Source: Octopus sinensis
Lineage: Eukaryota
Direction: 5' to 3'
Assembly: GCF_006345805.1 (NCBI RefSeq)
Contig: NC_043020.1
Span: 28,520,001-28,584,000, forward strand
Length of the DNA stretch: 64,000 bases
Every line of letters begins with the position of its first letter. The stretch's first letter is position 1. This document shows, piece after piece, positions 2,649 through 57,668 of this stretch. A program made the position numbers and the translations under genes. The notes under the pieces are model-generated. The model did no database searches, was not told the origin of the DNA, and was given only the letters and a program-made list of their open reading frames with translations.

Positions 2649-2801
2649 GTCTTGAAGATTGGGACATCATAACCCCAGGGGACATCCCTCAGCTGAAAGT
2701 GACAGCAAGCATGTTTGAGAAGAACTCCTTTCTTGGTGCCTTGACTGGTAGCATCACAAGCCACGTGGAGAAGACTTTATCGCAGGTTCAAAAAGTCATG
2801 G
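2649..2801 (+). CDS. TBC1D25: TBC1D25 exon carrying the LIR-type motif EDWDII
   Basis: Acceptor tttcAG at 2647-2648 and donor G|GTATGT after 2801, phase 1 to phase 1. Reads GLEDWDIITPGDIPQLKV...VQKVM. Confidence 0.88.
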
Positions 2802-3252
2802 GTATGTATTAGTCAGAATATACTTAGAAATGCACCAAACACTGACGAAGTTTATGAAATAATTACTTAATGAATTTTACATCCTTAAACATCTGTGTTT
2901 CCATCGTCTGTCCAGGTTTTCTGTTTCTAGCATTGGAGTAAGTATTTTTATTTAACTGGATGTAATTTTAAATGACAATACTTTATTCTAACAAGGACAA
3001 ACGGATTAAGTCGATTATATCGACCCCAGTGCATAACTGGTACTTTAACAGTGTACTTTATCATTGTGTCTAGTTTCTTGGTAAGCAGTCCAAAGTTTTA
3101 CTCAGAGATGCACTACAAGATTTTTGGTAAGCTATGACCTCTGCATAAATGCTAGCTCAATGTTTGACAATTTCTAACCAAATAATATAAAGTATTGTCT
3201 GTGTGTTACTTAAGGAAATCTTTGACGTTCTCTCTTTTCTATTTTCCCTCAG

Positions 3253-5633
3253 GTTTTAAATCTTACGAAGACAATGCTGTGAAAGCCTTAAAACCAGCCA
3301 TGACGGATATGGAGTTTCACAACTACTTAGACGTTGATGGACATCTCATCAGACCCCAGGAACTCCGACTGAGTATTTACCAAGGCGGTATTGAACCATC
3401 ACTGCGTAAAGTGGTCTGGCGGCATCTTCTAAATATTTTCCCTGATAACATGTCGGGGAAGGAGCGTTACGACTACTTGAAACGAAAGGAGCAGGAGTAC
3501 TACAAGGTGCGGAAGCAGTGGAAGGCACATTTAGAGACGGACACAGCTTCCGACGAAATCAAGAACATCATTTCAGTGGTCAAGAAGGATGTGTTAAGAA
3601 CAGACCGGACTTATAAGTTTTATGCTGGGTCAGACGATAGCAACAATATTCTGTCATTAATTCACATCTTAGTAACCTATGCAGTCACACATCCTGATAT
3701 CTCCTACTGTCAAGGCATGAGTGATCTAGCCTCACCTTTACTAGTCGTTCAGAAAGACGAGTCTCACGCCTATCTCTGCTTTTGTGGCTTGATGAAACAT
3801 ATGAAGATCAACTTTCATCCAAGCGGTCAAGCAATGAAGATCAAGCTACAGCATTTGTCACTGCTTCTCCAACTCTACGATCCTGTATTCTACACTTACC
3901 TCTGTGAAAGCAGCCCGAATCACCTTTTCTGCTTCCGATGGCTTCTTCTGGAACTGAAGCGTGAATTTCCTTTGGACGATGCTCTTTATATGCTGGAGGT
4001 GATGTGGAGTACGCTGCCTCCAGACCCGCCTGCTGTTGAACTCGAACTGACCGACCCGCATTATTCCCCCAGTTTAATTTCCTCTTCACCTTCATCCCCA
4101 ACACTAAATTTCCCCCAGAGCATGTACGCCAATTTCCTTGCACTTCGCCTAAAAGACGCTGCCAAAGCGCGAAACGTAGCTCATTCGAATAGTTACGATT
4201 CCGACAAGACGACCGATGCGGAGTCAAACGTGAGACTGAACGGAGTGAAGAAATCTTCTAATTGCATTAACATCCAAATTAATCAGCACGATGTCTCACC
4301 TATGGAAGAAAGTTACTCCGGTGGAGATTTCCCAGCCATGGAGGATGCTACAGCCAAGATGATGCAGGCTCGTTCTTCAAGCATCGATAAGTCGTTGTGC
4401 AGTTCCCCTCCCCCTCAGTTGCTCAGTGGTAGTGATGAGGATGTGTTTGCATTTGAAAGTTCTTCTTCCTCATCAGGTAAAAGCAAGTTAAGTGTCGGAA
4501 GCATCAATTCGTGTCCCAAAACCGATTCGGAAGAGACGAGAGACAACGGTTCTTACGAAGACACTCAGTTTCATTTATCTCTTGAGAATGTAGAGAAATT
4601 TCAAACCACGGAACCATCCAGTTCATTTCATTCCCCAGACTCTGAAGTTCCAAAGACCAAAACAAAAGTAAAGCACAAACCGGCTCAGCTGTCTCTGACC
4701 GTGTCGTCCAAACCGATGGTCACTCTGACTTCTCCAAACTGTGATAAAAGTCACACTGACGATGCTGACTATGTTGACGCCACTGATAGTGAGAACGTGA
4801 CCCCGACATCCTACGGCCAACAATGCCCACAGTTTAGGTCAGCTGTTAAGACCCCGTCTCCAGGCAACCTGCCTCCCCTCCCCCTATCACTTCCACTAAC
4901 ACTCCCACCACCCCCACTGCCGCTACCATCACAAATGAAAAAAGTGCACACTAACGACTCCAGTCTATCTACTTCTTCTTCGTCTGTGGCGTCGTCTCAG
5001 ATGGTTACCCCAAGCGAGTCCCCCGCCAGTGGTGACCCCTCCCATCTTCCTACGGTCCCTTGTTCCTTGCAATCATCGCAACATCCGGACATACCTCCAC
5101 TTCCGTTGCCGCCTTCCAATATTTCAACATCATCATCTTCACTGTCATCTCCCCCTTACCCTCCCCCGGCAGACTCTGCCTCGACCCATTCCTCCTTTGA
5201 TGCCAGCTCCCCAACCCAGCTCACTGTAAATGGTTCCACTGGTGTGACCACCACCACCATGTCTAATCCTGCTTCTTCGCCAACCAACATCACCAACACC
5301 AATACCATCACTACTGCTAATACTTCTACTACTCCTGTAAATGATAATGCTACTCTGGACCGGTCGCAGAAACTGCCTCCACCACAGGACTTTGGCGCCG
5401 GCAACCCATTCCTCATGTTCCTTTGCCTCACTATCCTCCTCCAACACCGAGATTTAATTATTAACAAGAAACTGGAATGTGAAGAGATAGATATGTATTT
5501 CCAGAGATTAACTCGCAAACAAAATGTTCACAAAGTCCTTCACCAAGCCAGGACTCTCTACACGGAGTACCTTCGCAATCAGCAGAAACTCGATGAAGAA
5601 TTCAAATCCATTGAAGACAGTTTAAGTATCTGA
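3253..5633 (+). CDS. TBC1D25: TBC1D25 terminal coding exon: TBC domain, long S/P/T-rich insert, conserved C-terminal helical motif
   Basis: Acceptor ccctcAG at 3251-3252. Contains LRLSIYQGGIEPSLRKVVWRHLL, R-finger KDVLRTDR, Q-finger YCQGMSDLA, LFCFRWLLLELKREF and C-terminal PPPQDFGAGNPFLMFLCLTILLQHRD. Stop TGA at 5631-5633. Confidence 0.92.
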
Positions 5634-14888: not shown

Positions 14889-15821
14889 TCAGGATTGGTT
14901 GGACGATAAGGTATAAAGTGGGAACGTCTCTCCAGAAGAAGCTACTAAACTGACTGGATAGGGCGAAGCCCCTGTGGTGGCACAAGTAGAAATACTTTCC
15001 ATTGGGGTCAACTCTATGCCTGATTCACATTTACTGGGTGTCATATAAGTTCTTGTAACCTTACTTGAAATGTGCCCTTGAGATGATCGTCTATGGGGTT
15101 CCGAGTTGGAACTGTCGTCCGTGTAACCTTTGCCACTCTGATTGATATTGGGTTTGCATTGTTTGATGTCCTCTTGCGAGAGATTGTAGTCTGTGACATC
15201 ATCGTCTAAGATCTCAATTGGTTCAGTCTTGATGCCGCATTCAGAAGGAATGCCACTGACCGAACTGCTACCTTGTAGTGACATGGAAGAGGCTTGGGAA
15301 GTGGAAGGAAACTGATTTTGGTGAGAAGTTAAATAATTATGCTGCTCGTTAAGAGACTGAAGCCTCTCGTCGAGCAGCGAATTATGAACATCTTCCAGGT
15401 GAGAATGCGACAATCCAACGTTCTGTTCTTGGTTGTCAAAAGTTACATCAGCAGGATTGGAATCGTCGCTCAATGTCAACACCACTGTTTGACGATTGCT
15501 CTGTGACTTGGGAAGAGAATCTCGGTGACGGGGCGTCAACGTTGACGGGGAGCTGGTCATTTGCTTGTGTTCGTTTAGACTGGCAGCAAACTCTCGGCAG
15601 TGTTTCTGAATTTTATCGACTTTTAAGAGATTAGATATTCGTTCGACATCCTTGTACAGATGTTCGTTAAGGTTAAGGACACCGTCGTAGAGAAAGCTGA
15701 CAAAGATTTTCAGTCCGTCTTCGCTAATCCCTGGTGGAAGATTCACTTCCAAGTCAGCACCATCGGTAATATTTTTTTCCATCAAGTGAGGACTGGCAGC
15801 AAACAAAACCAAACGATGTAA
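14889..15821 (-). CDS. BTB/POZ protein constant exon C3 (BTB core plus low-complexity tail, stop)
   Basis: Acceptor ttcttttcCAG, phase 0. Reads LHRLVLFAASPHL...GISEDGLKIFVSFLYDGVLNL...VERISNLLKVDKIQKHC (BTB signature HR-VL-A-S, F++FLY-G, L+V--+---C), then an S/T-rich tail with a GIKTEP SUMO-type motif. TGA at 14891-14889. Confidence 0.88.
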   Translation of the reverse strand, partial: LHRLVLFAASPHLMEKNITDGADLEVNLPPGISEDGLKIFVSFLYDGVLNLNEHLYKDVERISNLLKVDKIQKHCREFAASLNEHKQMTSSPSTLTPRHRDSLPKSQSNRQTVVLTLSDDSNPADVTFDNQEQNVGLSHSHLEDVHNSLLDERLQSLNEQHNYLTSHQNQFPSTSQASSMSLQGSSSVSGIPSECGIKTEPIEILDDDVTDYNLSQEDIKQCKPNINQSGKGYTDDSSNSEPHRRSSQGHISSKVTRTYMTPSKCESGIELTPMESISTCATTGASPYPVSLVASSGETFPLYTLSSNQS

Positions 15822-16595: not shown

Positions 16596-16746
16596 AGTCA
16601 CATTTTTGTTTCCACTACAAATTTTAGCATCACATAAACGCCGCTTCCTCCATAAACTTGCCAACGATTTCATCATCCCATCTGCATGTTCTGGATCGAC
16701 ATAGGTTTTCTTGAAGACGGTTGCAGGGCGGGAAGAAGCGGAAAAG
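16596..16746 (-). CDS. BTB protein constant exon C2 (BTB N-terminal part)
   Basis: Acceptor tatttaacAG (phase 2), donor ACT|GTAAGA (phase 0). Reads FSASSRPATVFKKTYVDPEHADGMMKSLASLWRKRRLCDAKICSGNKNVT (Y-D--H----L--L-----LCD BTB start). In frame with C3. Confidence 0.88.
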
Positions 16747-27211: not shown

Positions 27212-28519
27212 CTGTCGGTTCAGAGCAATTTCACTCAAATTAGGCAGGTGGGGGAAAGTATTGTCAGTATCGGTCTGTACCATTGACACACGCAGGCCAG
27301 ACGGGTGTGGGCTGTAATTCATAGAACCCGCATTCGTATCGTGGGTCGCCTGCATTTCGTGGGACGACAGGGTGTTTAGGCCAGATATCGAACTGATACC
27401 GGGCAAAGCGAGCGACTGAGATGGGGTCGTCAAAGAGCTGCTGGTACCTTGTTGGGGGTCGAACTGAAATGCATCGAACACCTGAAAGAGGACGAACTTG
27501 GCTGTTGCACGGATGCAGTGGTTTGTGTAGACCCGGGAGAGTTTGGCCGTAAGCGCTATCCTTTTCATCATCGTGGACAAAGCTTCTTTTCCGAGTGGAG
27601 ATGCATTATACCAGATGGAGTCCTGGAAGGATGTGGTCCGAGGATGCTGGAACAGAGCTAACTCGTGCGGGTTTCGCTTCCGCAGGTAGCGCTCGAACGT
27701 GGCCACTGGACACACGGCATTACCTGTAGCATACATCCTCGCACTGCGACTGGAGTCTGGGGACAACGGGGAGCTGTTCGATTCGATGCTACATCCGTTG
27801 GTGTACTGAGACAGCGATTTCCGTTTGTAGACGTATTTTCGACCATATTCATCGGTACCAAAGCCAAAATGGTGAGGGGTGAGATAGCGCTGGTTCTCCT
27901 GTCCCCGACGAAAGAAATAAAATGTAATTTCAAACCAGACCTTGTTGAGGAGGCCTTCTGGTGTGTTGGGGTTAAACACCTGACTGTGGGAATAGAGAGT
28001 AGCCATGTCAGCCTGGCTGATCGGCTCTTTGTGTTCGATCGACCCTTTGCCAGCTTCTTTCAGTCGCTTCAAAGCCACTTTAAACGACATGTTCGATTTA
28101 CGGAATGCCGGGTCGTTCACGATGTTCACAGTTTTCAGGTAACGGTTCAGTCCATGGCGAAGTGCAACCAACGAGGAAAAACTATAGAACTGGCCGCCTT
28201 GTGTACGGACATTGATGTAGAAATCAGAGAGCAGTTCATCCAACTCACTCTTGGCCATATCTTCAATGGCAGTATTGATACCACGGCTATGGCAGAAGTC
28301 ACGGAATATTTTCGCGCTGTACTTGGTGGCTTCTTTGGTTTTTTTGCTGTCATACTGATGGGGTTCTTTCGATGGTGGAGGCATGACCAATAGAGGGACA
28401 TCTTCGTGAATAACTCCAGCCGATTGTAAAGGAATGTTAGTGCTAGCAAGCAGAGAGTTTGCAGTAGAAGTGCACGGCGGAGGAGTCGGCGACGACGAGT
28501 CTAGTGGATTGGAAGCCAT
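27212..28519 (-). CDS. Variable first exon V1: Crypton-derived tyrosine-recombinase-like (DUF3504) domain, 436 aa, predicted catalytically dead
   Basis: ATG at 28519, uninterrupted ORF with KTKEATKYSAKIFRDF, GLNRYL, WFEITFYFFRRGQENQR, CPVATFERYL, PLGKEALSTMMK and VYTNHCIRAT. No GH...Y box follows. Donor CAG|GTAAGT after 27212 (phase 0). Confidence 0.82.
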
Positions 28520-28640
28520 TAGTAACCTTCTTCCGCACGGCACTACGTTCTAGTAGCGTGACGTCACGGCAACATAGATGCGTAGTGAGCACTACGAGAA
28601 GACATAGTGCCCCAACACTATAGAAGCCAAATAAATATTA
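28520..28640 (-). promoter_or_regulatory. Candidate promoter/5'UTR of V1 with CRE palindrome
   Basis: GTGACGTCAC at 28558-28567, locally CpG-rich, repeated ACTACG/CGTAGT. No polypyrimidine-AG acceptor just before the ATG. Confidence 0.45.
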
Positions 28641-29149
28641 CAGATTTATATAAAAGTTGCACGGATTTTTTCCCTCCTTGTAAATTTTTCGCACGGCTAT
28701 ATATTTCCGGGAATACTCTGCTTATACGTTGTTGAAAGAAAGCAAAGAAGCAAATTAATAGTCGATAGCACCTCTCCCACTATCTCTCTCAGTCTATCAT
28801 ACACATCACTATATCCTTATATGTTGCTGACCGCTTCACTCACAAAAGAAAAAAAATATATAAGATTAGTCCGCCGTGACGATAGAATGGCGGCCCAACT
28901 ACAGACAATAACACAAGTCAGCTTAGTTAGTTAACTAATTAAATGTTGAGGAAGACGAAACGAAGAGGGGGGTGCGTGGATAGAAATACGTATTCCTTCA
29001 GAAGTAGGGTATATATATATATTTACGGAAAATAACTGTGTTATCATAGATTGGCGATGTAGCCCAAAAACATGAAGAAATAGTAATTATTAAATGACCA
29101 TTTCAATATAATTTTACTAATTATAATTAAGCTGGTGTGGGTATATAAT

Positions 29150-29361
29150 ATATATGTAGGAAAAAGAGATAGACAGATATATGTATAAATGTGTGTGTGT
29201 GTGTGTATACATATCTATCTATACATCTATATCTCTATATATATGCATATCTATATATATATATATGCATATCTATATATATATCTATATCTATATATAT
29301 ATATATATATATATCATATCTATATATATTCTATATATATATATATATATATATATGCATA

Positions 29362-29404
<43 letters not shown>

Positions 29405-29909
29405 ATCTATATCTATAATATATATATATATCTATATATCTATATATATATATATATCTATCTATATCTATATATATATATATATCTATATCTATATAAT
29501 ATCTATATATATATATATTATCTATATCTATATAGGCATATCTATATATATATATGCATATCTATATATATATAATATGCATATCTATATATATATATAT
29601 ATGCATATCTATATATATCTATATATATATATATATGCATATCTATATATATATATATATTATAATATATCTATATATATATATATATATATATGTATAT
29701 CTATAAAATATGCATATCTATAATATATATATATATGGCCTATCTATATATATATATATATATTATATCTATATATATATATATATATATATGCATATTC
29801 TATATATATATCTATATATATATCTATATATATATCTATATATATGCATATCTATATATATATCTATATATATGCATATCTATATATATATATGCATATC
29901 TATATAACA

Positions 29910-29955
<46 letters not shown>

Positions 29956-30150
29956 TATCTATATATATATCTATATATATATATATAATATATATATATA
30001 TATTATATATGCATATCTATATATATATCTATATATATATATATTATATATATATATCTCATATCTATATATATATCTATATATATATATATCTATATAT
30101 ATATATATGCATATCTATATATATATCTATATATATATATATCTATATCT

Positions 30151-30186
<36 letters not shown>

Positions 30187-30695
30187 ATATCATATATATG
30201 CATATCTATATATATATATCTATTATATATATATAATATATATTATATCATACTATATTATATATATATATATATATATGCATATCTATATATATATATA
30301 TATATATATATATGCATATCTATATATATATATATGCATATCTATATATATATATATTATGCATATCTATATATATATATAATAATGCATCTATATATAT
30401 ATATATATATGCATATCTATATATATTATCATATGCATATCTATATATATATATATATATATATATGCATATCTATATATATATATATATATATATATGC
30501 ATATCTATATATATATATAATATATATATAATATATATATATATATCTATCTATAATATATAATATATATATATATGCATATCTATATATATATATATAC
30601 TATATGCAATATCTATATATATATATATATATGCATATCTATATATATATATATTATATATATGCATATCTATATATAGATATATATATATATGC

Positions 30696-30737
<42 letters not shown>

Positions 30738-31971
30738 TATCTATATATATATATATATATATCAATATCTATATATATAATATATATATAAGCATATCTA
30801 TAATATATATTATATATAGAATATATGCATATCTATATATTATTATATATATATATATGCATATCTATCTATATATATATATATATAATGCATATCTATA
30901 TATATATATATATATGCATATCTATATATATATATGCATATCTATATATATATATATATATATGCATATCTATATATATAATGCTATATCTATATATATA
31001 TATATATATGCATATCATATATATAGATATATATATATATATGCATATCTATATATATATATATCCTAGCAGTATCACCCGGCGTTGCTCGGGTTTGTAA
31101 GGGAAATAACTATAAAGCATTTTTAGAGAGTTATAGCCAAAAAATAGCAAAAAAATGGGAAAAAAATGATGGTAAATTTTTTGAGAATTAAAAAGGTCGA
31201 GTTGCGTCCCTAGAGAGTCTGTGGTTTGTGTTTCTGATTCTCGACCCCACGTCGAATTTATCAATTTTTTTTTGCAGAACTGGAGGAACTTTTCAAGATT
31301 TTTCGCTGCGTTAGTTTTGAATTATGACATTGGCTATGTGTGTATCAAGTTTCATCAGATCGGTTGAAAGCCGTGGTCAGGGTGAGGGTACAACCTAACA
31401 GACACCCAGACACACACCACAGACAAACTGCGTTTTTATAGAGAGAGATATATATATATGCATATCTATATATATATATATATGCATATCTCATCTATAT
31501 ATATATAATATATGCATATCTATATATATATATATGCAATATACAAATATAATATAAATATATATATATATATATATATTATATACAATATAAATATAAA
31601 TATATATATATATATACATATATATACAAATATAAATATAAATATATATATATATTATATATATATATATATACAAATATAAATATAAATAGATATATAA
31701 TATATATATATATATATACAAATATAATATAAATATTATATATATATATATTATATACAAATATAAATATAAATATATATATATATACATATATATACAA
31801 ATATAATATAAATATATATATATATATATACACAATATAAATAAAATATATATTAATATATATACAAATATAAATATAAAATAATAGATATATATATATA
31901 TATACAAATATAATATATATAATATATATATATATACAAATATAAATATATATATATATATATATATACAA

Positions 31972-32011
<40 letters not shown>

Positions 32012-32170
32012 TATATATACAAATATAAATATATATCTTATATATTATATATACAAAATAAATATATATATTATATATAATATATACAAATATAAATATA
32101 TATATATATATATATATATCCAAATATAATATATATATATATATATATAATATCACAAATATAAATAAAA

Positions 32171-32210
<40 letters not shown>

Positions 32211-32468
32211 ATCTAATAAAACTGTATATATATATATATATAATATATATCTATATATATATATGCATATCTATATATATATATATATATATGCATATCT
32301 ATATTATATAATAATATATATGCATATCTATATATATATATATATATGCATATCTATATATAATATGTATATCTATATATATATATGTATGCATATCTAT
32401 ATATATATATGTATGTAAATCTATATATATATATGTATGCATTCTATATAATATATATATATATATAT

Positions 32469-32499
<31 letters not shown>

Positions 32500-32865
32500 C
32501 TATATATATATATTATATATATCTATACACATATATATCTATATCTATACACACACACACATATATATATACACACATATATATAAATACACACACACAC
32601 AAATATATATATGTTTATGTATGCGTATGTATATATAAATGCACAGGCATACGTACGGCTCTGTGTGTGTGTGTGTGTGTGCATATATAGACAGATTACT
32701 ATTGCCTCTATATTGTGTGCGCGCGCGATTGTGTATATCACTATAGGGAAATGGTTAATTGGGACTTCGAAGCTTCGGCTTACTCATCAGATTGTCAGCC
32801 ACAACTTCGAAGTTACTCTCAACATTTTCCTTCCTGAAATTAAAATTATATATATCTATATATAT

Positions 32866-32910
<45 letters not shown>
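29150..32910. repeat. ~3.7-kb AT satellite, (AT)n-GCATATCT units, with a variant (AT)n-ACAAATATAAAT block at ~31540-32215
   Basis: Direct inspection; interrupted by a Helitron-like insert at 31066-31448. Confidence 0.9.
31066..31448 (-). mobile_element. Non-autonomous Helitron-like element
   Basis: On - it starts TCTCTCT..ATAAAA and ends with the hairpin CCCGAGCAACGCCGGG followed by ...CTAG. Same family at 49411-49698 (+) and 61761-62140 (-). Confidence 0.65.
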
Positions 32911-33163
32911 CTTTATTTTTGTTTCAATCATTTGGCTGCGGCCATGCTGGAGCACCGCCTTTAGTCGGACAAATCGACCCCGGGACTGACTTATCCTTTG
33001 TAAGCCTAGTACTTAATGTACTGTCCTGTTTTGCCGAACTGCTAGGTTACGAGGACGTAAACACACCAACAGCGGTTGTCAAGCAGTGGTGGGGAACAAG
33101 CACAAAGACAAAACCCCCCACACAACCCATACCAGCATGGACAAAAGTCGTTAAATGATGATG

Positions 33164-33204
<41 letters not shown>

Positions 33205-34146
33205 TGTGTGTGTATTTTTTGGTATCTGGCTACCAAATCCACTCGGTTTTGGACACCCAGAAGCTATAACTGGAGACACTTGGTGAAGGTGCCACCCTGT
33301 GGGACTGAACTCAGAACCATGTGGTCAAGAAATATATATAAATTTAATACAAATGTATATATTATATATATATATATATATATTATATATACATACAAAT
33401 ATACCTATATGCATATACATATATATACATATCCATATATATACATATATATACACACACACACATATATATATATACACATATATATACATATATAAAC
33501 ACATACACACGTGGTGGGTGCTGAATAAATACTGGTTCTGGGTAAAATTTAGGAGGGTCAATTAATAAGGTTGGGCCTCCAACAAGACACCCTGAAAGCC
33601 AGGAACTTTTCAATGTCCCCCCCATATGTGTGTGTGTGTGAAAGTGCATGGTGCAGTCAGGCCCCTGTGCTCATGATCACCAGACTGTAGTTTCAATTCC
33701 CAAACCGAGCGGCATCATGTCCTTCAGCAAGGTGTTTCATTTTATGTCACTTTCACTGGGTGTAGATTAACCTTGTGATGGCCTGGAACTGCATTCAAAG
33801 GTATTGCAATCCCAGGTGCAAAAATGTCATTGAAATCAAGACAGACTCTAGCCTATAGGCTGGAAAGATACACACATAGATATATATGTATATGCCTCGT
33901 GTGGCACCTGTGCAGGTGGCACATAAAAAGCACCCACTACACTCACGGAGTGGTTGGCGTTAGGAAGGGCATCCAGCTGTAGAAACACTGCCAGATCAGA
34001 CTGGGCCTGGCGCAGCCTACTGGCTTCCCAGACCCCAGTTGAACCATCCAACCCATGCTAGAATGGAAAACGATGATGATGATATATATATATGAAAAAA
34101 CAAGTAAAAAATAGAAAATGCTAAAATAATTTTATAGTGAACATTT

Positions 34147-34184: not shown

Positions 34185-35509
34185 TAACGATTAAATAATT
34201 AAATTTAGAAAAATTAGAAGAAAAGTTTTTTTAAAAGAATATTTCTATAAGTAGTGTTCAGATTTAAGTGGCATTCTGCCTTTCTCCACACACAACCCTC
34301 TCAATAACGAAGCCTTCGACACCATCCTCCACAACATACCCCTCCTAAAAAAAGACCACAGAATGAACACAATCCTCCAAACACACACGATCATAAAAAG
34401 CAAAAGACAGCCTAGATCCATGAAAAGTCTCCTTACACAAGCCCGAATTCACTCAACACAGAAGCCGACAGTAAAAAAATGTGGAAGACCCAATTGCGGG
34501 ATATGCGACTATCTAATCGAGTGTTCTGAGTTCTCCTTCAAACAGGGACAACGTTTTACAGTGAAAAGCAACTTCACATGTGCTTCGGAGAACCTAATAT
34601 ACTCACTAATCTGCTCCGGGTGTCAAGAGCAGTACATAGGCCAAACAAAAAATGGTTTGCGTAAACGAATGGCCCTGCACAGATCCCAGATAAAAATTCC
34701 CCAAAACAGAAAAATAGCTTTTAGCCAACACATAGATACTTGCGCCAACAAAAAAACACCAAACTTCAGAATTTTCCCCCTCTACCAATTTAGGGACGAT
34801 ACAACCTCGAGACAACGAATAAGTAAAGAAAATCTCTTTATTACAAAATACAAGCCACTTCTTAACGGGTCTACAATTAATATACCTCAACTTTAGAATA
34901 AAAGAAAAAAATATATATACACACACAAATACTACACTCCATAGAATCCATTACTAATCAGCCCCTTCATAGCTATATTTACACCCATTCATATTCTCCC
35001 TTCTCTGTTTTTTTCTTCTTCTTCTTCTTCCTCATCATCGTTATCATCATCATCAGCATCATCACCACCATCTTCTCCTTCTCCTCCTCCTCCTTCTTCT
35101 TCTTCATCATCATCGTCGTCATAATCATCACCACCATCACCATCATCGTCATCTTCTCCACCCCCTACCCCTTAAGTTTGTCACTAATGTTTTTTAGTAT
35201 AACACCTACGCTAATTCTATAAACAAGCCTGTCAATATAAATATTCTCCTGAATTGAACTGAGACTGCCAGCCGCCACTGACCATTCAAAATACGACCAT
35301 CAGGGCACTCCCAGATTCTCCCACCCCCTTTCCTCACCAGCCTTCCCTCTACTACCCTACCAAGAACTCACAACTACCTCGAACACACAAGTGCAAACAA
35401 GGGAGTCAGAGAAAGGCAGAATGCCACTTAAATCTGAACACTACTATAGAAATATTCTTTTAAAAAAACTTTTCTTCTAATTTTTCTAAATTTAATTATT
35501 TAATCGTTA

Positions 35510-40740: not shown

Positions 40741-41522
40741 ACACATGGTAAAGGGGTTGGTGTTAGGAAGGGCACCCAGCCGTAGAAACCACGTCAAAAT
40801 AGACATGGAACCAGAACAGTATTTCAGCTGGCCAGCTTCAGTCACGCAATCCAGCCCATGCCATCACGGAAAACAGATATTAGATGATGTATACAATAGT
40901 TGTAACTGTAGTATCATGCATAAATCTGTAAAACAAAAACAATCTCAAAACCAATTTCATTCATTTACAATGGTTACTGGTTCAATCCCACCGGTTGACA
41001 CCTTGGGTAAATAAATATCTTCCACTATAGTTCTAGGGCAACCAATGCATTATGGAGGAAACTATGTAGAAGCCTGTTGTACATCCTCATCATCATTTAA
41101 CATTCATTTCCCATACTGGCATGGGTTGAATCGCTTGGCAGGAACAGGCAAGACAGAGGACTGCACCAAGATCTACTGTCTGCTGTTGCATGGTTTCTAC
41201 AGTTGGATAGCTTTTTTAGCGCCAACTACTTTCCAGAGTGTAGTGGATGTTTTTTACAAGGCACCAGCAAGGTCACCAAGTAACTTGCAATACAAAGATC
41301 CCAAAATACCTGTTACATGGTAGCAGGGCATTCAAAAAATAGCAGCCAAATCTTTCCTTTTTCTGGGGAAGGGAGCCGTTTACACATGATTTCGATGTCA
41401 CATTTGTTGAAAGCATGCGAAATAACCTGGAAAAGAAAAAAATCCACGAAACAAAACACTGTTGCTGGGAAACTCCCAGTTTCCTGGTGACCCAATGGGT
41501 CACAGGTTGTCTAGTATGTATA

Positions 41523-41611
<89 letters not shown>

Positions 41612-41615
<4 letters not shown>

Positions 41616-42478
41616 TCAATCTAGCTAAAACTAAAGTCGTAATAAGTAGGAAGGTAGACAAATCACAAACGCCTTCAGGTAGATGGCCCTGCTCGATCTG
41701 TAGAAAAGGTGTAGGTAGAAACTCTATAAGATGCACCAAGTGTAAGCTATGGACACATAAGAGGTGCAGCAATGTCATAGGAAGGCTAACTAGGAAGATG
41801 GTTTTTGTATGTGGCAGATGCTCGGGAGCATTAACCTCTGAAAATCTGCAGAAAACAACTTCCGTCACTTTCCAGGGGGAAAAACTAGAAGTAGTTGATA
41901 GCTTCCATTATCTTGGTGACCAAGTCAGTAGTGGGGGGTGGGTGTGCTGAAAGTGTAACGGCTAGAGTAAGAATAGCCTGGGAAAAGTTTAGGGAGCTCT
42001 TACCTCTGTTGGTGACTAAAGGCCTCTCGCTCAGAGTAAAAGGCAGACTGTATGATGCATGTGTACGAACAGCCATGCTACATGGCAGTGAAACATGGGC
42101 CGTGACTGCTGAGGACATGCGTAAGCTCGCAAGAAATGAAGCTAGTATGCTCCGTTGGATGTGTAATGTCAGTGTTCATAGTCGACAGAGTGTAAGTACC
42201 TTGAGAGAAAAGTTGGACCTAAGAGGCATCAGATGTTGAGTGCAAGAGAGACGATTGCGCTGGTATGGTCATGTGGCGAGAATGGATGAAGATAGGTGTG
42301 TGAAAAAGTGCCACACCCTAGCAGTTGAGGGGACCTGTGGAAGAGGTAGACCCAGGAAAACCTGGGTCGAGGTGGTGAAGCACGACCTTCGAACTCTAGG
42401 TCTCACCAAGGAAATGACCAGAGACCGAGACCTATGGAAGTATGCTGTGCGTCAGAAGACCCGGCAAGACCAGTGAAA
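41612..42478 (+). mobile_element. 5'-truncated RTE-clade LINE (RT C-terminus with Cys-rich PHD-like insert), frameshift near 41940 and stop at 42237
   Basis: VNLAKTKV...CSICRKGVGRNSIRCTKCKLWTHKRC...LEVVDSFHYLG...MLHGSETW...QERRLRWYGHVARM...RGRPRKTW. Confidence 0.9.
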
Positions 42479-44284: not shown

Positions 44285-45786
44285 GGTACTTGTCTATTGT
44301 CGTGGTCCCGTTTTCGCACACGCGAATTCGCGCGCGCGCGCACGCCAGACTTGGGTACTCGATACTCGAGATCCTACGAGGTGACTTGCGCATGCGCAGT
44401 GCAGAATTCGCGCATGCGCGTTACCCCCCCCCCCCTAAAAAAAAGGTGTTGGATTTCACTAAAAATATATATATGTGTGTGTGTGTGTATATAACATTTT
44501 CAATTTTACACAAAAAAATTACATAGTCGCTTTCCTCGCGGATTTACAGATAAATGAATTAATTACTATTTTACAGAATAAAATTAATGAATTAATTATA
44601 TAAATTAAATAATTCTTGAAAATTAATTAATATTAACAATATTTTTTGAACAAAGTAAATAATTTATAAAACTTGGTTAATAATTTTTTTTACACAAACG
44701 CGAACGTATATAATTTGTGAAACTTTTTTTTTTTTTACAGACGTATATAATTTGGTAAACTTAATGAATTAATTTCTTCTCATCATCATCATCGTTTAAC
44801 GTCCGTTCTCCATGCCAGCATGGGTTGGACGGTTCGACCGGGGATCTGGGAAGCCAGAAGGCTGCACCAGACTCCAGTCTTATCTGGCAATGTTTCTACA
44901 GCTGGATGCCCTTCCTAACGCCAACCACTCCGAGAGTGTAGTGGGTGCTTTTTACATGCCACCCGCACAGGTGCCAGGAGAGGCTGGCAACGGCCACGGT
45001 CGGATTGGTGCCAGTCGAGGCGGCTCTGGCATCGGCCACGATTCGGATAGTGCTTTTTACGTACCACCAGTCCAGGGGTCCTGGCATTTGCCGGGTGCCA
45101 CACTTGCCCCAACATGTCTTCGCAAGCAAAGGGGGTTGGCGTGGGTGCCTGTCGTGGGATGAGGTTCGATATCAACTTCGCTTGCCTCAACAGGTCTTTG
45201 TGTATAAATGTATAAATTTTTCGCACTAAATTCTTTCCGTAGAATTTATCAAAAAACGCGCAAAATTATTCCGTAGAATTTATCAAATTAAAAAACGCAA
45301 AATTAATATATTTTTTGAAATTGCAAATTATTTAGAATATAAAACAAATGAAGTTAAATTTTTAAAATAAATGTCATATACTTATACTCTGTAAGGTGGT
45401 GTGTTCACACTTCAATTTACTATTTTCTAGAAATGTTGCTTTTCTAATTGAAACAATTTTTCTCAATCTCCATTTAAAAGTCCATAATGCCTCTTGAGCC
45501 ATATCAAAATGAACAACTTTGAATTACGCGGCGGTGGTGGTGGTGGTGGTGTGAGGTTCTAATTTTTTTTTCTGATCTCTCTTTGCCCCCTCTTTATCTC
45601 AGTTGTTCATTCCGCTAATATTTAGAAAAATTTTCGCGCCCAATTTTTGTTGTCGCGGGAAAAGATGAACGATTTAAAATAAATATATCTTAATTGTAGT
45701 GTGAGAAAGTATATATATTCTGATGACAAAATATATTATCTTTCAAAAACATCCCAAATTTATAGACTATATCGTGTAGGTTTAAG

Positions 45787-45832
<46 letters not shown>

Positions 45833-46805
45833 CTTAAACCTACACGATATAGTCTATAAATTCTACGGAAAGAATTTAGTGCGAAAAATTTATACATTTA
45901 TACACAAAGACCTGTTGAGGCAAGCGAAGTTGATATCGAACCTCATCCCACGACAGGCACCCACGCCAACCCCCTTTGCTTGCGAAGACATGTTGGGGCA
46001 AGTGTGGCACCCGGCAAATGCCAGGACCCCTGGACTGGTGGTACGTAAAAAGCACTATCCGAATCGTGGCCGATGCCAGAGCCGCCTCGACTGGCACCAA
46101 TCCGACCGTGGCCGTTGCCAGCCTCTCCTGGCACCTGTGCGGGTGGCATGTAAAAAGCACCCACTACACTCTCGGAGTGGTTGGCGTTAGGAAGGGCATC
46201 CAGCTGTAGAAACATTGCCAGATAAGACTGGAGTCTGGTGCAGCCTTCTGGCTTCCCAGATCCCCGGTCGAACCGTCCAACCCATGCTGGCATGGAGAAC
46301 GGACGTTAAACGATGATGATGATGAGAAGAAATTAATTCATTAAGTTTACCAAATTATATACGTCTGTAAAAAAAAAAAAGTTTCACAAATTATATACGT
46401 TCGCGTTTGTGTAAAAAAAATTATTAACCAAGTTTTATAAATTATTTACTTTGTTCAAAAAATATTGTTAATATTAATTAATTTTCAAGAATTATTTAAT
46501 TTATATAATTAATTCATTAATTTTATTCTGTAAAATAGTAATTAATTCATTTATCTGTAAATCCGCGAGGAAAGCGACTATGTAATTTTTTTGTGTAAAA
46601 TTGAAAATGTTATACACACACACACACATATATATTTTTAGTGAAATCCAACACCTTTTTTTTAGGGGGGGGGTAACGCGCATGCGCGAATTCTGCACTG
46701 CGCATGCGCAAGTCACCTCGTAGGATCTCGAGTACCTACGTCTGGCGTGCGCGCGCGCGCGAATTCGCGTGTGCGAAACCGGGACCACGACAATAGACAA
46801 GTACC
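44285..46805. repeat. Large inverted repeat (~960-bp arms) with an internal (TA)n-centred palindrome
   Basis: 44285-~45250 is the reverse complement of ~45858-46805, including a shared SINE; mirrored ORFs in the track confirm this. 45758-45863 is a perfect palindrome around (AT)n. Confidence 0.92.
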
Positions 46806-47292: not shown

Positions 47293-47853
47293 CTTCCCAT
47301 ACTTGATATCAGCGATAGTCGCGATTTGTTGACTGGCATCCCAGTTAATTCCAGGTAGGTAGGACGACGATTCATAAGCGGAGATTAAGTTAGCGGCAAC
47401 AACTTCTGTCTTGATGGCATGTTCCAACTGTAGAGATGTGCTGCTAGTAAGGGCACTTTGCTGGTCATCTTGGAATTTTAACGGAAGCCCGTCAATGTTC
47501 GGGGCTTTCAGTAAACGCCTCGCGGGTTTCGGTAATCTCTTCAAAGAACTCGCCGTCGACCTGTTACGTATGGAAGGCCGATCGTTGCTGTGATTGTGGT
47601 TCTCCCTAAACGATATTAGCTCTTGTTTGTTCGACATGACAGCGCTAGAGAGACAGCCCAGTGTTTTACACTTCCAGTAAATTCTGTCTTTGCGTTTATA
47701 GTTAAGACGAAACAGATAGCCATTTAAGGCCAAGAGTTGTCCGCCTCTCGTCGTCACGACCAGTTCGTACTCCGGCTGGCGCGGTTTGAATGTCTGCCTT
47801 TTTTTATTTAGTTTATAATCGTGGTTAACATTGAGAAACGAATCGTTCGCCAT
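47293..47853 (-). CDS. Variable exon V3: FLYWCH domain plus linker, 187 aa
   Basis: ATG at 47853; YELVVTTRGGQLLALNGYLF...RIYWKCKTLGC...RENHNH; AIKTEV SUMO-type motif. Donor AAG|GTATGT after 47293 (phase 0). No TIRs seen nearby. Confidence 0.78.
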
Positions 47854-50719: not shown

Positions 50720-52217
50720 TAGGTTGAAATCCCTTATCCGAAATTCCTAAAGATTTCGGAATATTTTTATACTTGCATCCATGAAATAGGACACCTTGGG
50801 GGATGGGACCCAAGTCTAAACACAATATCCACTTACATCTTATATTATATATATTTTTTTTTATTCTTTTGCTTGTTTCAGTCATATGACTGCAACCAGG
50901 ACTTTTTTTTTCAAACTCTAGTACTTATTCTATTGCTCTCCTTTGCCGAATTGCTAAGTTACGAGGATGTAAACACACCAGCACCGGTTGTCAAGCGGTG
51001 GTAGGGGACAAATACAAACACAATAACGTGCACACACACACACACACACACAATGAGCTTCTTTCAGTTTCCGTCTACCAAGTCCTCTCACAAGGCTTTG
51101 GTCGGCCCGAAGCTATAGTATAAGGTACTAGCCAAAGGTACCGCGCAGTGGGACTGAACCCGGAACCATGTGGTTGGGAAGTAGGCTTCTTACCACACCC
51201 CCACGCTTAACATTAGAACAGTAAGATATCCGCTTCGATGTCATGTTTTGATTAAAAGATTACACTACATGTACGCCATTTGTATTTCATTCTTTGCTCT
51301 ACGGATATTGGGTTTAATGTAAGATATAAACATTTTTAAAAAGCCAAAGCATTGAACATGATTACAGGTAAATAAAATGAAAACTGAAAAAGTCAACATA
51401 GCATTTTAAAAAAAAGTAATGTACAAATAACGATGTTAGTCATGTTATACTTATACACGGATGTGAAATTCGGGTCTAAAATAAGAATCACGTTTTGGGC
51501 TTACTGTTTTTAAAGATTTAATGCCGTGCCTTTTCCTAAATTTTTGCAACCAGTCTGCAGAATATTCACAGCTACCCTTAATTTTCAGTTTGTTATGATA
51601 GATTTTTGCCTGTTTCGTGATCAGCAATGCATTAAGCGGGATGTGTTTACTCTGGCACTGACGAATCCATTCCATTAGAACACGATCGTGATTTTCATTT
51701 TTCGCTCTATGTAATTTTTTCCTGTACTTCATCAAGCTTTGATCATCGCTTTCTTCATAGAACTGTCTTTTCAGGTCGTAAACAGTCGTTGTTCCGACAC
51801 CAAACTCCTCCGCCAGTTGCTTCACACTTACACCGCTCTCAAGTTTTTTCAACAACTTAACTTTCTGCATTATAGTTAGACATTGATGTTTTCTCTTTTC
51901 ACGATTACCCATGTGGGTATTTCCAGGCCTTTTCGACATTTCCGACATCTTCTTCTCGTCACAGGGCACAAAACAGGCGGCAATCACAAGTAACGAGCGA
52001 AGGTGTCACTCTGATGGCTGCTAACAAACTTCCAACTGAACTCTGGACGATAAAACTGCACCCAGGGTAGGTGAGGTCACATACGATAACGGCACACATC
52101 TGCACTTGGTGGAACTTTCTTAGCACTTTGTAGAATATTCTATTTGAGGTATGTCATGTTAGAATCCACAAAAAAACTTTCGGATTTGGGAATTTCGGAT
52201 ACAGGATTTTCAGCATG
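50720..52217 (-). mobile_element. Tigger/pogo (Tigger4/Zombi-like) element, internally deleted, with SINE insertions
   Basis: Ends taggttgaaatcccttatccgaaa (50720) and tttcggatacaggattttcagcatg|ta (52217); internal psq-HTH plus CENP-B HTH ORF. Confidence 0.75.
51505..51948 (-). CDS. Candidate variable first exon V4: HTH_psq plus CENP-B HTH, 148 aa
   Basis: MSEMSKRP...KRKHQCLTIMQKVKLL...GVGTTTVYDL...EYSADWLQKFRKRHGIK. Donor ACA|GTAAGC after 51505 (phase 0). DDD domain absent. Confidence 0.6.
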
Positions 52218-53759: not shown

Positions 53760-54218
53760 TATTTTTAAAGATTTAATGCCGTGCCTTTTCCTAAATTTTT
53801 GCAACCAGCCTGCAGAATATTCACAGCTACCCTTAATTTTCAGTTTGTTATGATAGATTTTTGCCTGTTTCGTGATCAGCAATGCATTAAGCGGGATGTG
53901 TTTACTCTGGCACTGACGAATCCATTCCATTAGAACACGATCGTGATCTTCATTTTTCGTTCTATGTAATTTTTTCCTGTACTTCATCAAGCTTTGATCA
54001 TCGCTTTCTTCATAGAACTTCAACAGTTTGTCCTTTTGTTTCTTCAGGTCGTAGACAGTCGTTGTTCCGACACCAAACTCCTCGGTCAATTGCTTCACAC
54101 TTACACCGCTCTCAAGTTTTTTCAACAACTTAACTTTCTGCGTTATAGTTAGACATAGATGTTTTCTCTTTTTCCTTTCACGATTACCCATGTGGGTATT
54201 TCCAGGCCTTTTCGGCAT
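53760..54218 (-). CDS. Candidate variable first exon V5: HTH_psq plus CENP-B HTH, 153 aa (paralogue of V4)
   Basis: MPKRP...KKRKHLCLTITQKVKLL...YSAGWLQKFRKRHGIKSLKI. Donor ATA|GTAAGC after 53760 (phase 0). Confidence 0.62.
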
Positions 54219-57083: not shown

Positions 57084-57668
57084 ATTTTCCATCACCAAGT
57101 CCTCACTTTTCAATATCCTCAACATAAACAGTTCCGACTGCGACTGGTCATTCTTGTCGTTCCATCGACCCGTCGCCGGATTTGCTGACTTCACTGGACT
57201 CTTGTTGAATCTGGCCTTACTACAATGGTTCTTGTAATTTCCATGTCTGCGACTACTGCACCTCGGACACAGAGAAATATAGATTTTTATGGCTTCGGCC
57301 GTCACATTGGCATATAATTGACGGGTGATGTTCTGCATTCTGTTGATACCAGCATGAGAATGTGTTAAGTGAACAGCTTTCAGGGCTCGGAATAAATCCT
57401 CGTCGGCGATGTAAGGACGAACGGATTCCGAGTCTCTTCGTCTTCTTCTCTTAATTAGTTTGGTTCCTTGATCATTGGTGACCAAATCAAAACGGCGAGT
57501 TACATTGTATTCTTCCCCAGTCCAAGCGGTTTTCTTGTCCCAAGCCCCTTTCAAAATGAGCAGGTATTTGTTGTATTGTTCCTTTGTCATGCTAACTACA
57601 TTTTTACCTATTTTCTCATTTTTCTTCACTCTCCACGTTCTCAAGAATTCTTCTTCGGACGTCAACAT
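57084..57668 (-). CDS. Variable first exon V6: integrase-type H2C2 zinc-binding domain (KRBA2/Ginger2-like N-terminus), 195 aa, no DDE core
   Basis: ATG at 57668; DEDLFRALKAVHLTHSHAGINRMQNITRQLYANVTAEAIKIYISLCPRC. Donor AAT|GTAAGT after 57084 (phase 0). Confidence 0.78.

What the first reader, a model, noticed from the sequence alone, without database searches (positions are those of the whole stretch)
27212..28519. Domesticated, catalytically dead Crypton recombinase exon positioned to fuse with BTB (KCTD1-like convergence)
SEEN: a 436-codon intact ORF with the first catalytic Arg (FFRRGQEN) and H-x-x-R (TNHCIRAT), but no GH...Y box. It runs into a low-complexity linker and a perfect phase-0 donor. 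KNOWN: Crypton-derived DUF3504 genes include ZMYM2-4, QRICH1, KIAA1958 and a long KCTD1 isoform that also pairs DUF3504 with a BTB of the T1 class. INFERRED: an independent DUF3504-BTB fusion using a ZBTB/tramtrack-like BTB, retaining DNA binding but not recombination.
Basis: partly seen in the sequence, partly recalled or inferred. Interest (0 to 1): 0.72.

Follow-up and report, generated by a model that had tools for sequence, protein, structure and literature searches.

The report
Dead Crypton recombinase fused to BTB
This octopus exon is a transposon recombinase that has lost its cutting residues and is spliced onto a BTB protein-interaction domain, giving a conserved cephalopod gene that parallels, apparently independently, the long form of vertebrate KCTD1.

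Summary
On the minus strand, an ATG at 28519 opens 436 codons that end at a CAG|GTAAGT phase-0 donor after 27212. The product hits Pfam DUF3504 (E 5.5e-11).

The window is Octopus sinensis chromosome CM016882.1. RefSeq XP_029650369.1 (845 aa, uncharacterized) is encoded 100% by this exon plus three downstream exons: 18095-17950, 16746-16596 and 15821-14889. Those three carry a BTB/POZ domain (PF00651).

The same fusion is annotated in O. vulgaris, O. bimaculoides and Argonauta. It also appears as one continuous ORF in an RNA-seq contig from the cuttlefish Sepia esculenta, so the junction is seen in RNA and predates the octopus/cuttlefish split.

- **Selection:** both domains are under strong purifying selection.
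- **Catalytic residues:** the first Arg and H-x-x-R are kept. The conserved Lys, the last His and the tyrosine nucleophile are missing, and no remnant lies elsewhere in the window.
- **Relation to KCTD1:** the tree, the BTB class and the decay pattern all argue for an origin separate from KCTD1.

This is a new member of a known kind. It sits in databases but I found no description of it in the papers I could search. Five upstream exons encoding other transposon-derived DNA-binding domains may feed the same BTB; this is suggestive but unproven.

The parts
27212..28519 (-). Coding part of the Crypton-derived exon: 436 codons, from the ATG to the phase-0 donor CAG|GTAAGT
   Evidence: residues 1-436 of XP_029650369.1 map here at 100% identity
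27482..28354 (-). Tyrosine-recombinase-like two-domain core, residues 56-346 (core-binding-like domain plus truncated catalytic domain). R205 is the codon at 27905-27907, H334 at 27518-27520, R337 at 27509-27511
   Evidence: Pfam; alignments; AF2 core pLDDT mostly above 85 and Foldseek hits to QRICH1 and Cre; coordinates
27212..27481 (-). Ser/Thr/Gln-rich linker, residues 347-436. It replaces the C-terminal recombinase segment that would carry the last His and the Tyr
   Evidence: 68% aa identity to Sepia against 93% for the core
28520..28620 (-). Highly conserved 5' leader. It holds an acceptor-like tctatag|TG (exon base 28617), a 13-codon uORF (28605-28564) and the TGACGTCA palindrome (28566-28559)
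   Evidence: 100% identical in O. vulgaris and O. bimaculoides over 141 nt, and about 88% identical to the Sepia transcript. The acceptor is used in O. vulgaris model CAI9739954.1
17950..18095 (-). Constant exon C1, with a phase-0 acceptor ttacag|GAG and a phase-2 donor. It contains an in-frame ATG at 18089-18087 in good context, a possible start for a BTB-only isoform
16596..16746 (-). Constant exon C2 (151 nt), which encodes the first half of the BTB/POZ domain.
14889..15821 (-). Constant exon C3: the second half of the BTB domain, a 220-residue tail with the conserved motif GIKTEPIEILDDD and an invariant C-terminus, and the stop codon
38280..38669 (-). Upstream exon encoding a FLYWCH zinc finger, with phase-0 donor AAA|GTAAGT. 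The donor is used in an O. vulgaris gene model
   Evidence: Pfam; donor; splice to 28617 confirmed by exact look-up of CAI9739954.1; pN/pS 0.20 against O. bimaculoides
47293..47853 (-). Upstream exon encoding a FLYWCH zinc finger, with phase-0 donor AAG|GTATGT
   Evidence: pN/pS 0.07 against O. bimaculoides; conserved in Argonauta at 51% aa identity on the same strand, with ACG|GTAGGT following the ORF
51505..51948 (-). Upstream exon encoding CENP-B_N and Tc5 HTH domains (copy b of a tandem duplication), with a phase-0 donor
53760..54218 (-). Upstream exon encoding CENP-B_N and Tc5 HTH domains (copy a), with a phase-0 donor
57084..57668 (-). Upstream exon with a weak integrase H2C2 zinc-binding match and a phase-0 donor. 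The recorded range of LOC115223832 begins exactly at its ATG
   Evidence: (E 0.0016, below the Pfam cut-off)

Best explanation
This is the 5' coding exon of a single-copy cephalopod host gene (O. sinensis LOC115223832).

**Origin (inferred).** A CryptonA-type transposon inserted upstream of, or within the 5' region of, a BTB/POZ gene. Its whole tyrosine-recombinase ORF, minus the last segment, was captured by splicing: a phase-0 donor arose downstream of the H-x-x-R helix and joins the phase-0 acceptor of exon C1.

**Product (shown).** The protein is 845 aa. It consists of a Cre-like two-domain clamp that cannot perform catalysis, a flexible linker, a dimerising BTB/POZ domain and a disordered tail. 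The clamp lacks the tyrosine nucleophile, the last His and the conserved Lys.

**Evidence status.** Shown here: the exon structure, the RNA junction in a cuttlefish, conservation, purifying selection, the residue losses and the fold.

**Function (inferred).** The protein most likely acts as a nuclear chromatin or transcription regulator. The dead recombinase would supply target recognition, either by binding DNA directly or, as QRICH1 does in Zincore, by clamping a DNA-bound zinc-finger factor. The BTB would supply dimerisation and recruitment of a co-repressor or CUL3. The similarity to vertebrate KCTD1 isoform b is convergent.
For: - **Exon map:** the window is 100% identical to O. sinensis CM016882.1, and XP_029650369.1 maps to four exons at 100%.
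- **Orthologues with the same architecture:** O. vulgaris, O. bimaculoides, Argonauta hians and two further transcript-type contigs.
- **RNA evidence:** L001 is a 4211-nt contig from Sepia esculenta larval RNA-seq run SRR25114245. It carries one continuous 862-aa DUF3504-BTB ORF.
- **Selection:** all 21 coding differences between O. sinensis and O. vulgaris are synonymous (with both assemblies encoding P0001). pN/pS against O. bimaculoides is 0.04 for this exon. Against Sepia, the core is 93% and the BTB 98% identical in protein, with synonymous sites saturated.
- **Residues:**
- **No catalytic remnant or second copy in the window:**
- **Fold:**
- **Synteny:** a RabGAP-TBC neighbour is present in three octopus assemblies.
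- **Independence from KCTD1:**
- **KCTD1b precedent:** PMC3212892.
- **Capture by splicing as a general route:** bioRxiv 10.1101/2020.05.07.082677.
Against: - No functional data exist. DNA binding, nuclear localisation and BTB partners are all inference.
- R205, H334 and R337 are retained and invariant in cephalopods. This could reflect phosphate or DNA contact, but it is not explained.
- The O. vulgaris annotation splices an upstream FLYWCH exon onto an acceptor 98 nt before this ATG. The exon may therefore not always be a first exon, and the promoter is not defined.
- Support for the nearest intact Crypton as sister is only 46 of 100 bootstraps, and the NJ tree is crude.
- No RNA reads from octopus itself were examined. 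The octopus junction rests on gene models plus the cuttlefish transcript.
Confidence: 0.85

Rival explanations
1. The exon is a decaying or autonomous Crypton insertion sitting in an intron, and the DUF3504-BTB protein is a gene-prediction chimera.
For: The fusion in octopus itself is known to me only from gene models. The exon has its own ATG and a conserved leader.
Against: A cuttlefish RNA-seq contig carries the joined ORF. The junction peptide is invariant in five species. pN/pS is 0.04, and 21 of 21 differences are synonymous. There is one copy in the window and no catalytic tail. Synteny is conserved.
Confidence: 0.03
2. The fusion shares a single ancient origin with vertebrate KCTD1 isoform b and is not convergent.
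For: Fish KCTD1 long isoforms are among the better non-cephalopod hits, at about 41% identity. Both proteins place DUF3504 N-terminal to a BTB-fold domain.
Against: The BTB families differ: PF00651 here against PF02214 plus the KCTD1/15 C-terminal domain. The two groups are sister in 6 of 100 bootstraps, and intact Cryptons are closer. KCTD1 lost the second Arg but keeps the Lys, whereas cephalopods show the opposite pattern. Kojima and Jurka place the KCTD1 insertion after the KCTD1/KCTD15 duplication in early vertebrates (PMC3212892).
Confidence: 0.05
3. The dead recombinase domain does not read DNA itself. It is a protein-protein module that grips DNA-bound zinc-finger factors, as QRICH1 does in the SEPHS1-QRICH1 Zincore complex. 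The BTB then brings in effectors.
For: The top structural match of the model is QRICH1 chain 9hjt_H in Zincore bound to ZFP91 on DNA. The Zincore complex is cited in PMC13538652. There is a weak Pfam QRICH1-domain hit at residues 77-150.
Against: TM-score to 9hjt_H is only 0.34-0.39, against about 0.5 for Cre. Sequence identity is 17%. Retention of R205, H334 and R337 fits phosphate contact at least as well.
Confidence: 0.3
4. The exon is not an independent first exon. Transcripts start further upstream, at the FLYWCH exon or beyond, and the DUF3504-BTB ORF is translated after a short upstream ORF.
For: O. vulgaris protein CAI9739954.1 equals the FLYWCH exon (donor 38280) spliced to acceptor 28617, with a stop at 28564. 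The recorded range of LOC115223832 reaches 57668.
Against: The Sepia transcript is collinear with the genome through that acceptor, out to the position matching 28643. That means a start upstream of the acceptor within the same exon.
Confidence: 0.3

Closest known systems
KCTD1 isoform b (vertebrates)
   Same: A Crypton-derived DUF3504 domain lies in one 5' exon and is spliced onto a BTB-fold domain. The catalytic Tyr is lost. The host gene is strongly conserved (PMC3212892; Pfam of a fish KCTD1).
   Different: KCTD1 has a T1-type BTB_2 plus the KCTD1/15 C-terminal domain, and it lost the second Arg. The octopus protein has a PF00651 BTB/POZ with an N-terminal extension, keeps H-x-x-R and lost the Lys. 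The two are not sister in the tree.
WOC / ZMYM2-4 / QRICH1 / KIAA1958 (other domesticated Crypton genes)
   Same: Inactive DUF3504 in a nuclear regulator. The QRICH1 structure is the top fold match.
   Different: In those proteins DUF3504 is C-terminal or paired with MYM zinc fingers or a CARD domain, not with BTB. They also lost the His and the second Arg.
Active CryptonA transposons (for example P0005, and Mytilus P0006)
   Same: 43-50% identity over residues 56-345, with the same two-domain layout.
   Different: Those are intronless ORFs of 450-480 aa with the full R-H-R-H-Y set and the conserved Lys.
Host-transposase fusion genes formed by splicing (Cosby et al.)
   Same: A transposon-encoded DNA-recognition domain sits in its own exon and is joined by splicing to a host regulatory domain.
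   Different: That survey covers tetrapod DDE transposases, mostly joined to KRAB. Here the source is a tyrosine recombinase and the host is a mollusc.
Drosophila mod(mdg4) and lola (from my own knowledge, not tested here)
   Same: One BTB module combined with alternative exons encoding different DNA-binding domains, FLYWCH in mod(mdg4).
   Different: There the BTB is N-terminal and the variable exons are 3'. Here the BTB is C-terminal and the candidate variable exons are 5'. Use of the other exons with this BTB is unproven.

Membership tests
Domesticated Crypton (DUF3504) host gene | DUF3504 / tyrosine-recombinase-like domain above the Pfam threshold | tested here: met
   43.2 bits against a cut-off of 29.7; Cre and QRICH1 fold matches
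Domesticated Crypton (DUF3504) host gene | Incomplete catalytic set (R-H-R-Y) | tested here: met
   Tyr, the last His and the conserved Lys are absent; R, H and R are kept
Domesticated Crypton (DUF3504) host gene | Orthologous single-locus conservation under purifying selection | tested here: met
   Five species, conserved synteny, pN/pS 0.04
Domesticated Crypton (DUF3504) host gene | Expressed as part of a host mRNA | tested here: met
   Sepia esculenta RNA-seq contig with the joined ORF. Octopus reads were not examined.
Autonomous Crypton transposon | Intact R-H-R-[HW]-Y recombinase in a self-contained ORF | tested here: not met
Autonomous Crypton transposon | Multiple near-identical genomic copies | tested here: inconclusive
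   One copy in the window, and only orthologue clusters above 50% identity in the protein libraries. Whole cephalopod genomes could not be scanned.
KCTD1 orthologue | T1-type BTB_2 (PF02214) and KCTD1/15 C-terminal domain (PF20871) | tested here: not met
   Only PF00651 was found, whereas fish KCTD1 shows both
BTB/POZ (PF00651) protein | BTB/POZ domain above threshold | tested here: met
   38.7 bits against a cut-off of 20.5, residues 516-614; PDB hits to gigaxonin, ZBTB17, BACH1 and BCL6
ZBTB transcription factor | C-terminal C2H2 zinc fingers | tested here: not met
   No zinc-finger family in the Pfam scan of the 845-aa protein
mod(mdg4)/lola-type multi-isoform BTB locus | Several alternative exons with different DNA-binding domains, each joined to the common BTB exons in mRNA | tested here: inconclusive
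   Six same-strand exons all have phase-0 donors. FLY1 and FLY2 are under selection, and the recorded gene range reaches 57668. However, none of 16 predicted isoform sequences is in the protein collection.

The most novel reading that the evidence does not exclude
The DUF3504 exon is one of about six alternative 5' exons spread over 43 kb. Each encodes a different transposon-derived DNA-recognition module: an integrase H2C2 finger, two CENP-B/Tc5 HTH, two FLYWCH, and the Crypton recombinase. All have phase-0 donors able to join the same BTB exons. This would be a mirror image of Drosophila mod(mdg4)/lola.

In addition, this BTB gene family may have trapped Crypton recombinases more than once. 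P0099 has a homologous BTB and tail, but its recombinase domain comes from another Crypton sublineage and still carries the Tyr.
Probability: 0.4. Interest if true: 0.75.

Novelty: new member of a known kind. Interest (0 to 1): 0.5.

Why it matters
Domesticated Crypton recombinases have so far been described mainly from vertebrates and Drosophila: KCTD1, KIAA1958, ZMYM2-4, QRICH1 and WOC. This adds a deeply conserved coleoid cephalopod gene in which a dead recombinase was again joined to a BTB-fold domain.

The recurrence suggests that a recombinase clamp paired with an oligomerising BTB is a favoured solution. This protein also decays differently from KCTD1, keeping H-x-x-R while losing Lys and Tyr, which gives a natural comparison for working out what DUF3504 domains actually bind.

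If the upstream exons also feed the same BTB, the locus would show how one host gene can collect several transposon DNA-binding domains. That is relevant to the expansion of transposon-derived regulators reported in octopus (PMC10027918).

Tried and rejected
- **Direct C1->C3 splice.** I first joined C1 (donor TCT|GTAAGG) directly to the 3' exon, which gave a plausible 793-aa protein. Alignment to orthologues showed a missing 52-residue block, and tblastn located the extra exon. The true C1 donor is two codons later, in phase 2.
- **Predicted alternative isoforms.** I looked up 16 isoform sequences by exact match. They comprised each upstream exon plus the constant exons for O. sinensis and O. 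bimaculoides, BTB-only forms, and upstream exons joined to acceptor 28617. Only the 98-aa O. vulgaris model was found.
- **Homology search with the constant region.** It returned only 3'-exon ORF fragments and did not return even P0001. Absence of other isoforms in that tool is therefore weak evidence.
- **Homology search with concatenated upstream exons.** It returned only Tigger/jerky-type proteins and no octopus isoform.
- **Profile search of PDB by sequence.** It hit only KCTD1 BTB chains, through the fish sequences in the alignment, and was uninformative for DUF3504.
- **dN/dS against Sepia.** It could not be computed because synonymous sites are saturated (pS 0.87), so I report pN and identity instead.
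- **pN/pS between the two HTH exon copies.** The value is 0.42 on 14 differences, which is inconclusive.
- **Organism of SRR8281680-84 (P0099).** It could not be identified. P0092 has no contig on record.

Full report
**What is there**

The window is 100% identical to Octopus sinensis chromosome CM016882.1 (GCA_006345805.1) over 59 kb. On the minus strand an ORF spans 28543-27152. Its first ATG is at 28519, and 436 codons later the sequence AACCGACAG|GTAAGTGC gives a phase-0 donor after base 27212. This is by far the best donor in the ORF (score 12.7).

The product matches Pfam DUF3504 above the curated threshold (43.2 against 29.7 bits, E 5.5e-11). It also has a sub-threshold QRICH1-domain match in its N-terminal part. 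A full HMMER pass over 1.8 billion representatives finds 4509 relatives, 323 of them at E<=1e-30. Every alignment stops at query residue 340-350.

**The fusion is real**

A search with the predicted spliced product found XP_029650369.1, "uncharacterized protein LOC115223832 isoform X1", 845 aa, with DUF3504 and BTB. tblastn and an exact reconstruction show that it is encoded at 100% by four minus-strand exons:
- 28519-27212
- 18095-17950
- 16746-16596
- 15821-14889

The same protein is annotated in O. vulgaris (CAI9739953.1, identical sequence), O. bimaculoides (XP_014789876.1) and Argonauta hians (81% identity). Two transcript-sized contigs encode 862- and 813-aa versions. One of these, L001, is a 4211-nt contig with a single continuous ORF. 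It comes from run SRR25114245, which is RNA-seq of Sepia esculenta larvae (PMC10442824). The junction peptide ...LNRQ|EAMEVQSAVAAAT... is invariant in all five sequences. The splice is therefore seen in RNA in a cuttlefish, and the fusion predates the octopus/cuttlefish split.

**It is a host gene under selection**

- O. sinensis and O. vulgaris differ at 21 coding positions across the four exons. Both assemblies encode the identical protein, so all 21 differences are synonymous. The flanking intron is about 94% identical.
- Against O. bimaculoides, pS is about 0.20 everywhere. pN/pS is 0.04 for this exon and 0.05 for the last exon.
- Against Sepia, synonymous sites are saturated (pS 0.87). 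Even so, the recombinase-like core is 93% identical in protein and the BTB 98%. The linkers and tail are 62-68% identical.
- A RabGAP-TBC gene lies downstream in convergent orientation in all three octopus assemblies.
- tblastn with 11 intact Crypton proteins finds only this one copy in the 64 kb.

**Catalytic residues**

I aligned 137 near-full-length relatives, 57 of which carry the complete R-H-R-H-Y set. The cephalopod proteins compare as follows:
- **Kept:** R205 (FFRRGQEN, invariant in 44 of 44 sequences), H334 and R337 (TNHCIRAT).
- **Lost:** immediately after ...RATA the sequence departs from the family. The SGH....Y segment is absent.
- **Also lost:** the T-K-N-H motif, whose Lys is present in 56 of 57 intact relatives, is replaced by Y-T-N-G-C. 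That loop is poorly modelled and its alignment is less certain.

No remnant of the lost segment exists in any frame in the window. Without the nucleophile the protein cannot perform recombinase chemistry. This is a direct reading of the sequence, given the established mechanism of tyrosine recombinases.

Vertebrate KCTD1 shows a different pattern: R, H, then Gly in place of the second Arg, with the Lys kept. This agrees with Kojima and Jurka (PMC3212892).

**Fold**

An AlphaFold2 model of residues 1-360 has mean pLDDT 73. Most of residues 57-346 are above 85. Residues 1-54, 236-257 and 347-360 are disordered. Foldseek against PDB ranks QRICH1 in the Zincore-ZFP91-DNA complex (9hjt_H) first. 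Some twenty Cre or Tre recombinase chains follow, aligned over about 310 columns with TM about 0.5. Both recombinase domains are therefore retained: the core-binding-like N-terminal domain and the catalytic-type domain up to the H-x-x-R helix.

**The BTB partner**

The constant exons give a PF00651 BTB/POZ domain (38.7 bits, residues 516-614). The best solved relatives are gigaxonin, ZBTB17, BACH1 and BCL6. No zinc fingers, BACK or Kelch domains follow. The tail carries an invariant GIKTEPIEILDDD motif and an invariant C-terminus.

C1 contains an in-frame ATG in good context two codons after its acceptor. A BTB-only isoform is therefore conceivable, as in KCTD1a, but I found no record of one.

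**Relation to KCTD1**

A fish KCTD1 long isoform has DUF3504 plus BTB_2 (PF02214) plus the KCTD1/15 C-terminal domain, which is a different BTB class.

In a neighbour-joining tree of the 290-column core, cephalopods and KCTD1 are each monophyletic in 100 of 100 bootstraps, but they are sister in only 6 of 100. The nearest sequence to the cephalopod clade is P0005 (50% identity, intact RHRHY), which is sister in 46 of 100. P0005 is an intronless 484-aa ORF on a 64.6-kb contig.

Together with the different decay patterns and the vertebrate-specific history of KCTD1b, this supports an independent domestication. The tree method is simple, and the support for the sister relationship is modest.

**How unusual is the pairing?**

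I scanned 42 long representatives of the family with Pfam. They show fusions of DUF3504 with KRAB, SCAN, C2H2 fingers, THAP, ATF7IP, GTF2I and the MYM finger. Besides P0001, three further members carry PF00651 BTB. I identified two of them.
- **P0092** (805 aa) has a canonical BTB directly after the recombinase domain.
- **P0099** (926 aa) comes from 24 transcript-sized contigs of runs such as SRR8281680, -81 and -84, from an organism I could not identify. Its BTB is clearly homologous to the octopus one (36% identity, E 6e-23, including the SLASLW.K..LCDA extension), and it has a similar IKSEPISIDDD motif. Its recombinase domain, however, belongs to another Crypton sublineage: it ranks 59th of 135 by distance to the octopus domain, and its nearest neighbours are intact elements. 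It also still has the C-terminal segment, with Gln in place of the last His and the Tyr retained.

Either homologous BTB genes captured Cryptons twice, or one exon replaced another.

**The wider locus**

Upstream on the same strand lie five more ORFs encoding transposon-type DNA-recognition domains:
- a weak integrase H2C2 match (57668-57084)
- two CENP-B_N/Tc5 HTH copies in a 3.4-kb tandem duplication (54218-53760 and 51948-51505)
- two FLYWCH fingers (47853-47293 and 38669-38280)

Each ends at a phase-0 GT donor, compatible with the phase-0 acceptor of C1. The range recorded for LOC115223832 runs from 57668, exactly the ATG of the first of these ORFs, to 14889.

FLY1 and FLY2 are conserved in O. 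bimaculoides with intact donors, at pN/pS 0.07 and 0.20. In Argonauta, a FLY1 orthologue (51% identity) and an HTH exon lie upstream on the same strand, and phase-0 GT donor sequences follow each. A published survey noted that most octopus CENPB-type factors are associated with BTB (PMC10027918).

Against the array idea, none of my 16 predicted isoform sequences is in the protein collection. The one splice I could verify joins the FLY2 donor to an acceptor at 28617, 98 nt upstream of the DUF3504 ATG, where the FLYWCH frame stops at 28564 (O. vulgaris CAI9739954.1). The Sepia transcript, in contrast, is collinear with the genome through that acceptor. I therefore treat the array as a hypothesis with probability about 0.4.

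**Mechanism**

Shown here: a conserved, expressed protein made of a catalytically disabled Cre-like clamp, a linker, a BTB/POZ domain and a tail.

Inferred: the clamp provides target recognition, and the BTB provides dimerisation and effector recruitment. That would make the protein a chromatin or transcription regulator.

Whether the clamp reads DNA itself or grips DNA-bound zinc-finger factors as QRICH1 does cannot be decided here. The invariant R205, H334 and R337 are compatible with phosphate-backbone contact.

**Novelty**

The gene model and its automatic Pfam domains are already in RefSeq and UniProt, under "uncharacterized" or "BTB domain-containing" names. Full-text searches found no paper linking DUF3504 or Crypton with cephalopods or with this BTB fusion. 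It is a new member of a known kind: a domesticated Crypton recombinase captured by splicing onto a host domain.

Noticed in passing
window 28559-28620 (minus strand): About 100 nt upstream of the DUF3504 ATG are more conserved than the coding sequence. They are 100% identical in O. vulgaris and O. bimaculoides and about 88% identical in the Sepia transcript. The stretch holds a 13-codon uORF (MSSRSAHYASMLP; MSSRSMHYASIRV in Sepia) whose stop lies inside a TGACGTCA (CRE-like) palindrome.
   Followed up: partly
window 51505-51948 and 53760-54218 (minus strand): The CENP-B/Tc5 HTH exons are 66-71% identical in protein to mammalian 'jerky-like' or Tigger-derived proteins (Tupaia, Castor, Cavia, Callithrix and others). 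This is unexpectedly high for octopus against mammal, and raises the possibility of horizontal spread of a pogo/Tigger lineage.
   Followed up: no
window 51040-56685: A tandem duplication of about 3.4 kb, 94-95% identical, carries the two HTH exons. Copy b has in-frame deletions inside the CENP-B_N domain.
   Followed up: partly
window 44469-45249 and 45856-46635: A large near-perfect inverted repeat: arms of about 790 nt, 99-100% complementary, about 606 nt apart. Each arm holds an identical 116-aa ORF. The peptide motif [10 protein letters not shown] within that ORF also appears in ORFs near 13.7 kb and 22.9 kb, so it looks like a SINE-like repeat family or possibly an assembly artefact.
   Followed up: partly
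window 29100-33500: About 4.4 kb of TA-rich microsatellite (TATATG/TATACA-type; GC down to 14%) lies immediately upstream of the conserved leader of the DUF3504 exon.
   Followed up: no
window 34363-34896 (plus strand): A 177-aa ORF with a GIY-YIG nuclease domain (E 5e-5) lies on the opposite strand inside the locus. It is probably a Penelope-like element fragment.
   Followed up: no
window 41462-42239 (plus strand): ORFs that look like the C-terminal part of a LINE reverse transcriptase, with a zinc-knuckle-like segment. This is judged by eye only.
   Followed up: no
window 3195-5633 (plus strand): A large exon of a RabGAP-TBC gene (Pfam E 7e-35), convergent with the BTB gene. The same neighbour is present in O. 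vulgaris and O. bimaculoides.
   Followed up: partly
window 14889-15821 (minus strand), protein residues 730-745 and 821-845: The tail has an invariant GIKTEPIEILDDD motif, which resembles a SUMO-consensus site followed by a SUMO-interaction-like acidic stretch. It also has an invariant C-terminus, SPYPVSLVASSGETFPLY.LSSNQS. A similar IKSEPISIDDD occurs in the distant homologue P0099.
   Followed up: no
L007 (transcript contig, run SRR8281680), ORF 1461-4241: A 926-aa DUF3504-BTB protein from an unidentified organism keeps the recombinase C-terminal segment with the Tyr, but has Gln in place of the last His. It has a 1.46-kb 5' leader without notable ORFs.
   Followed up: partly
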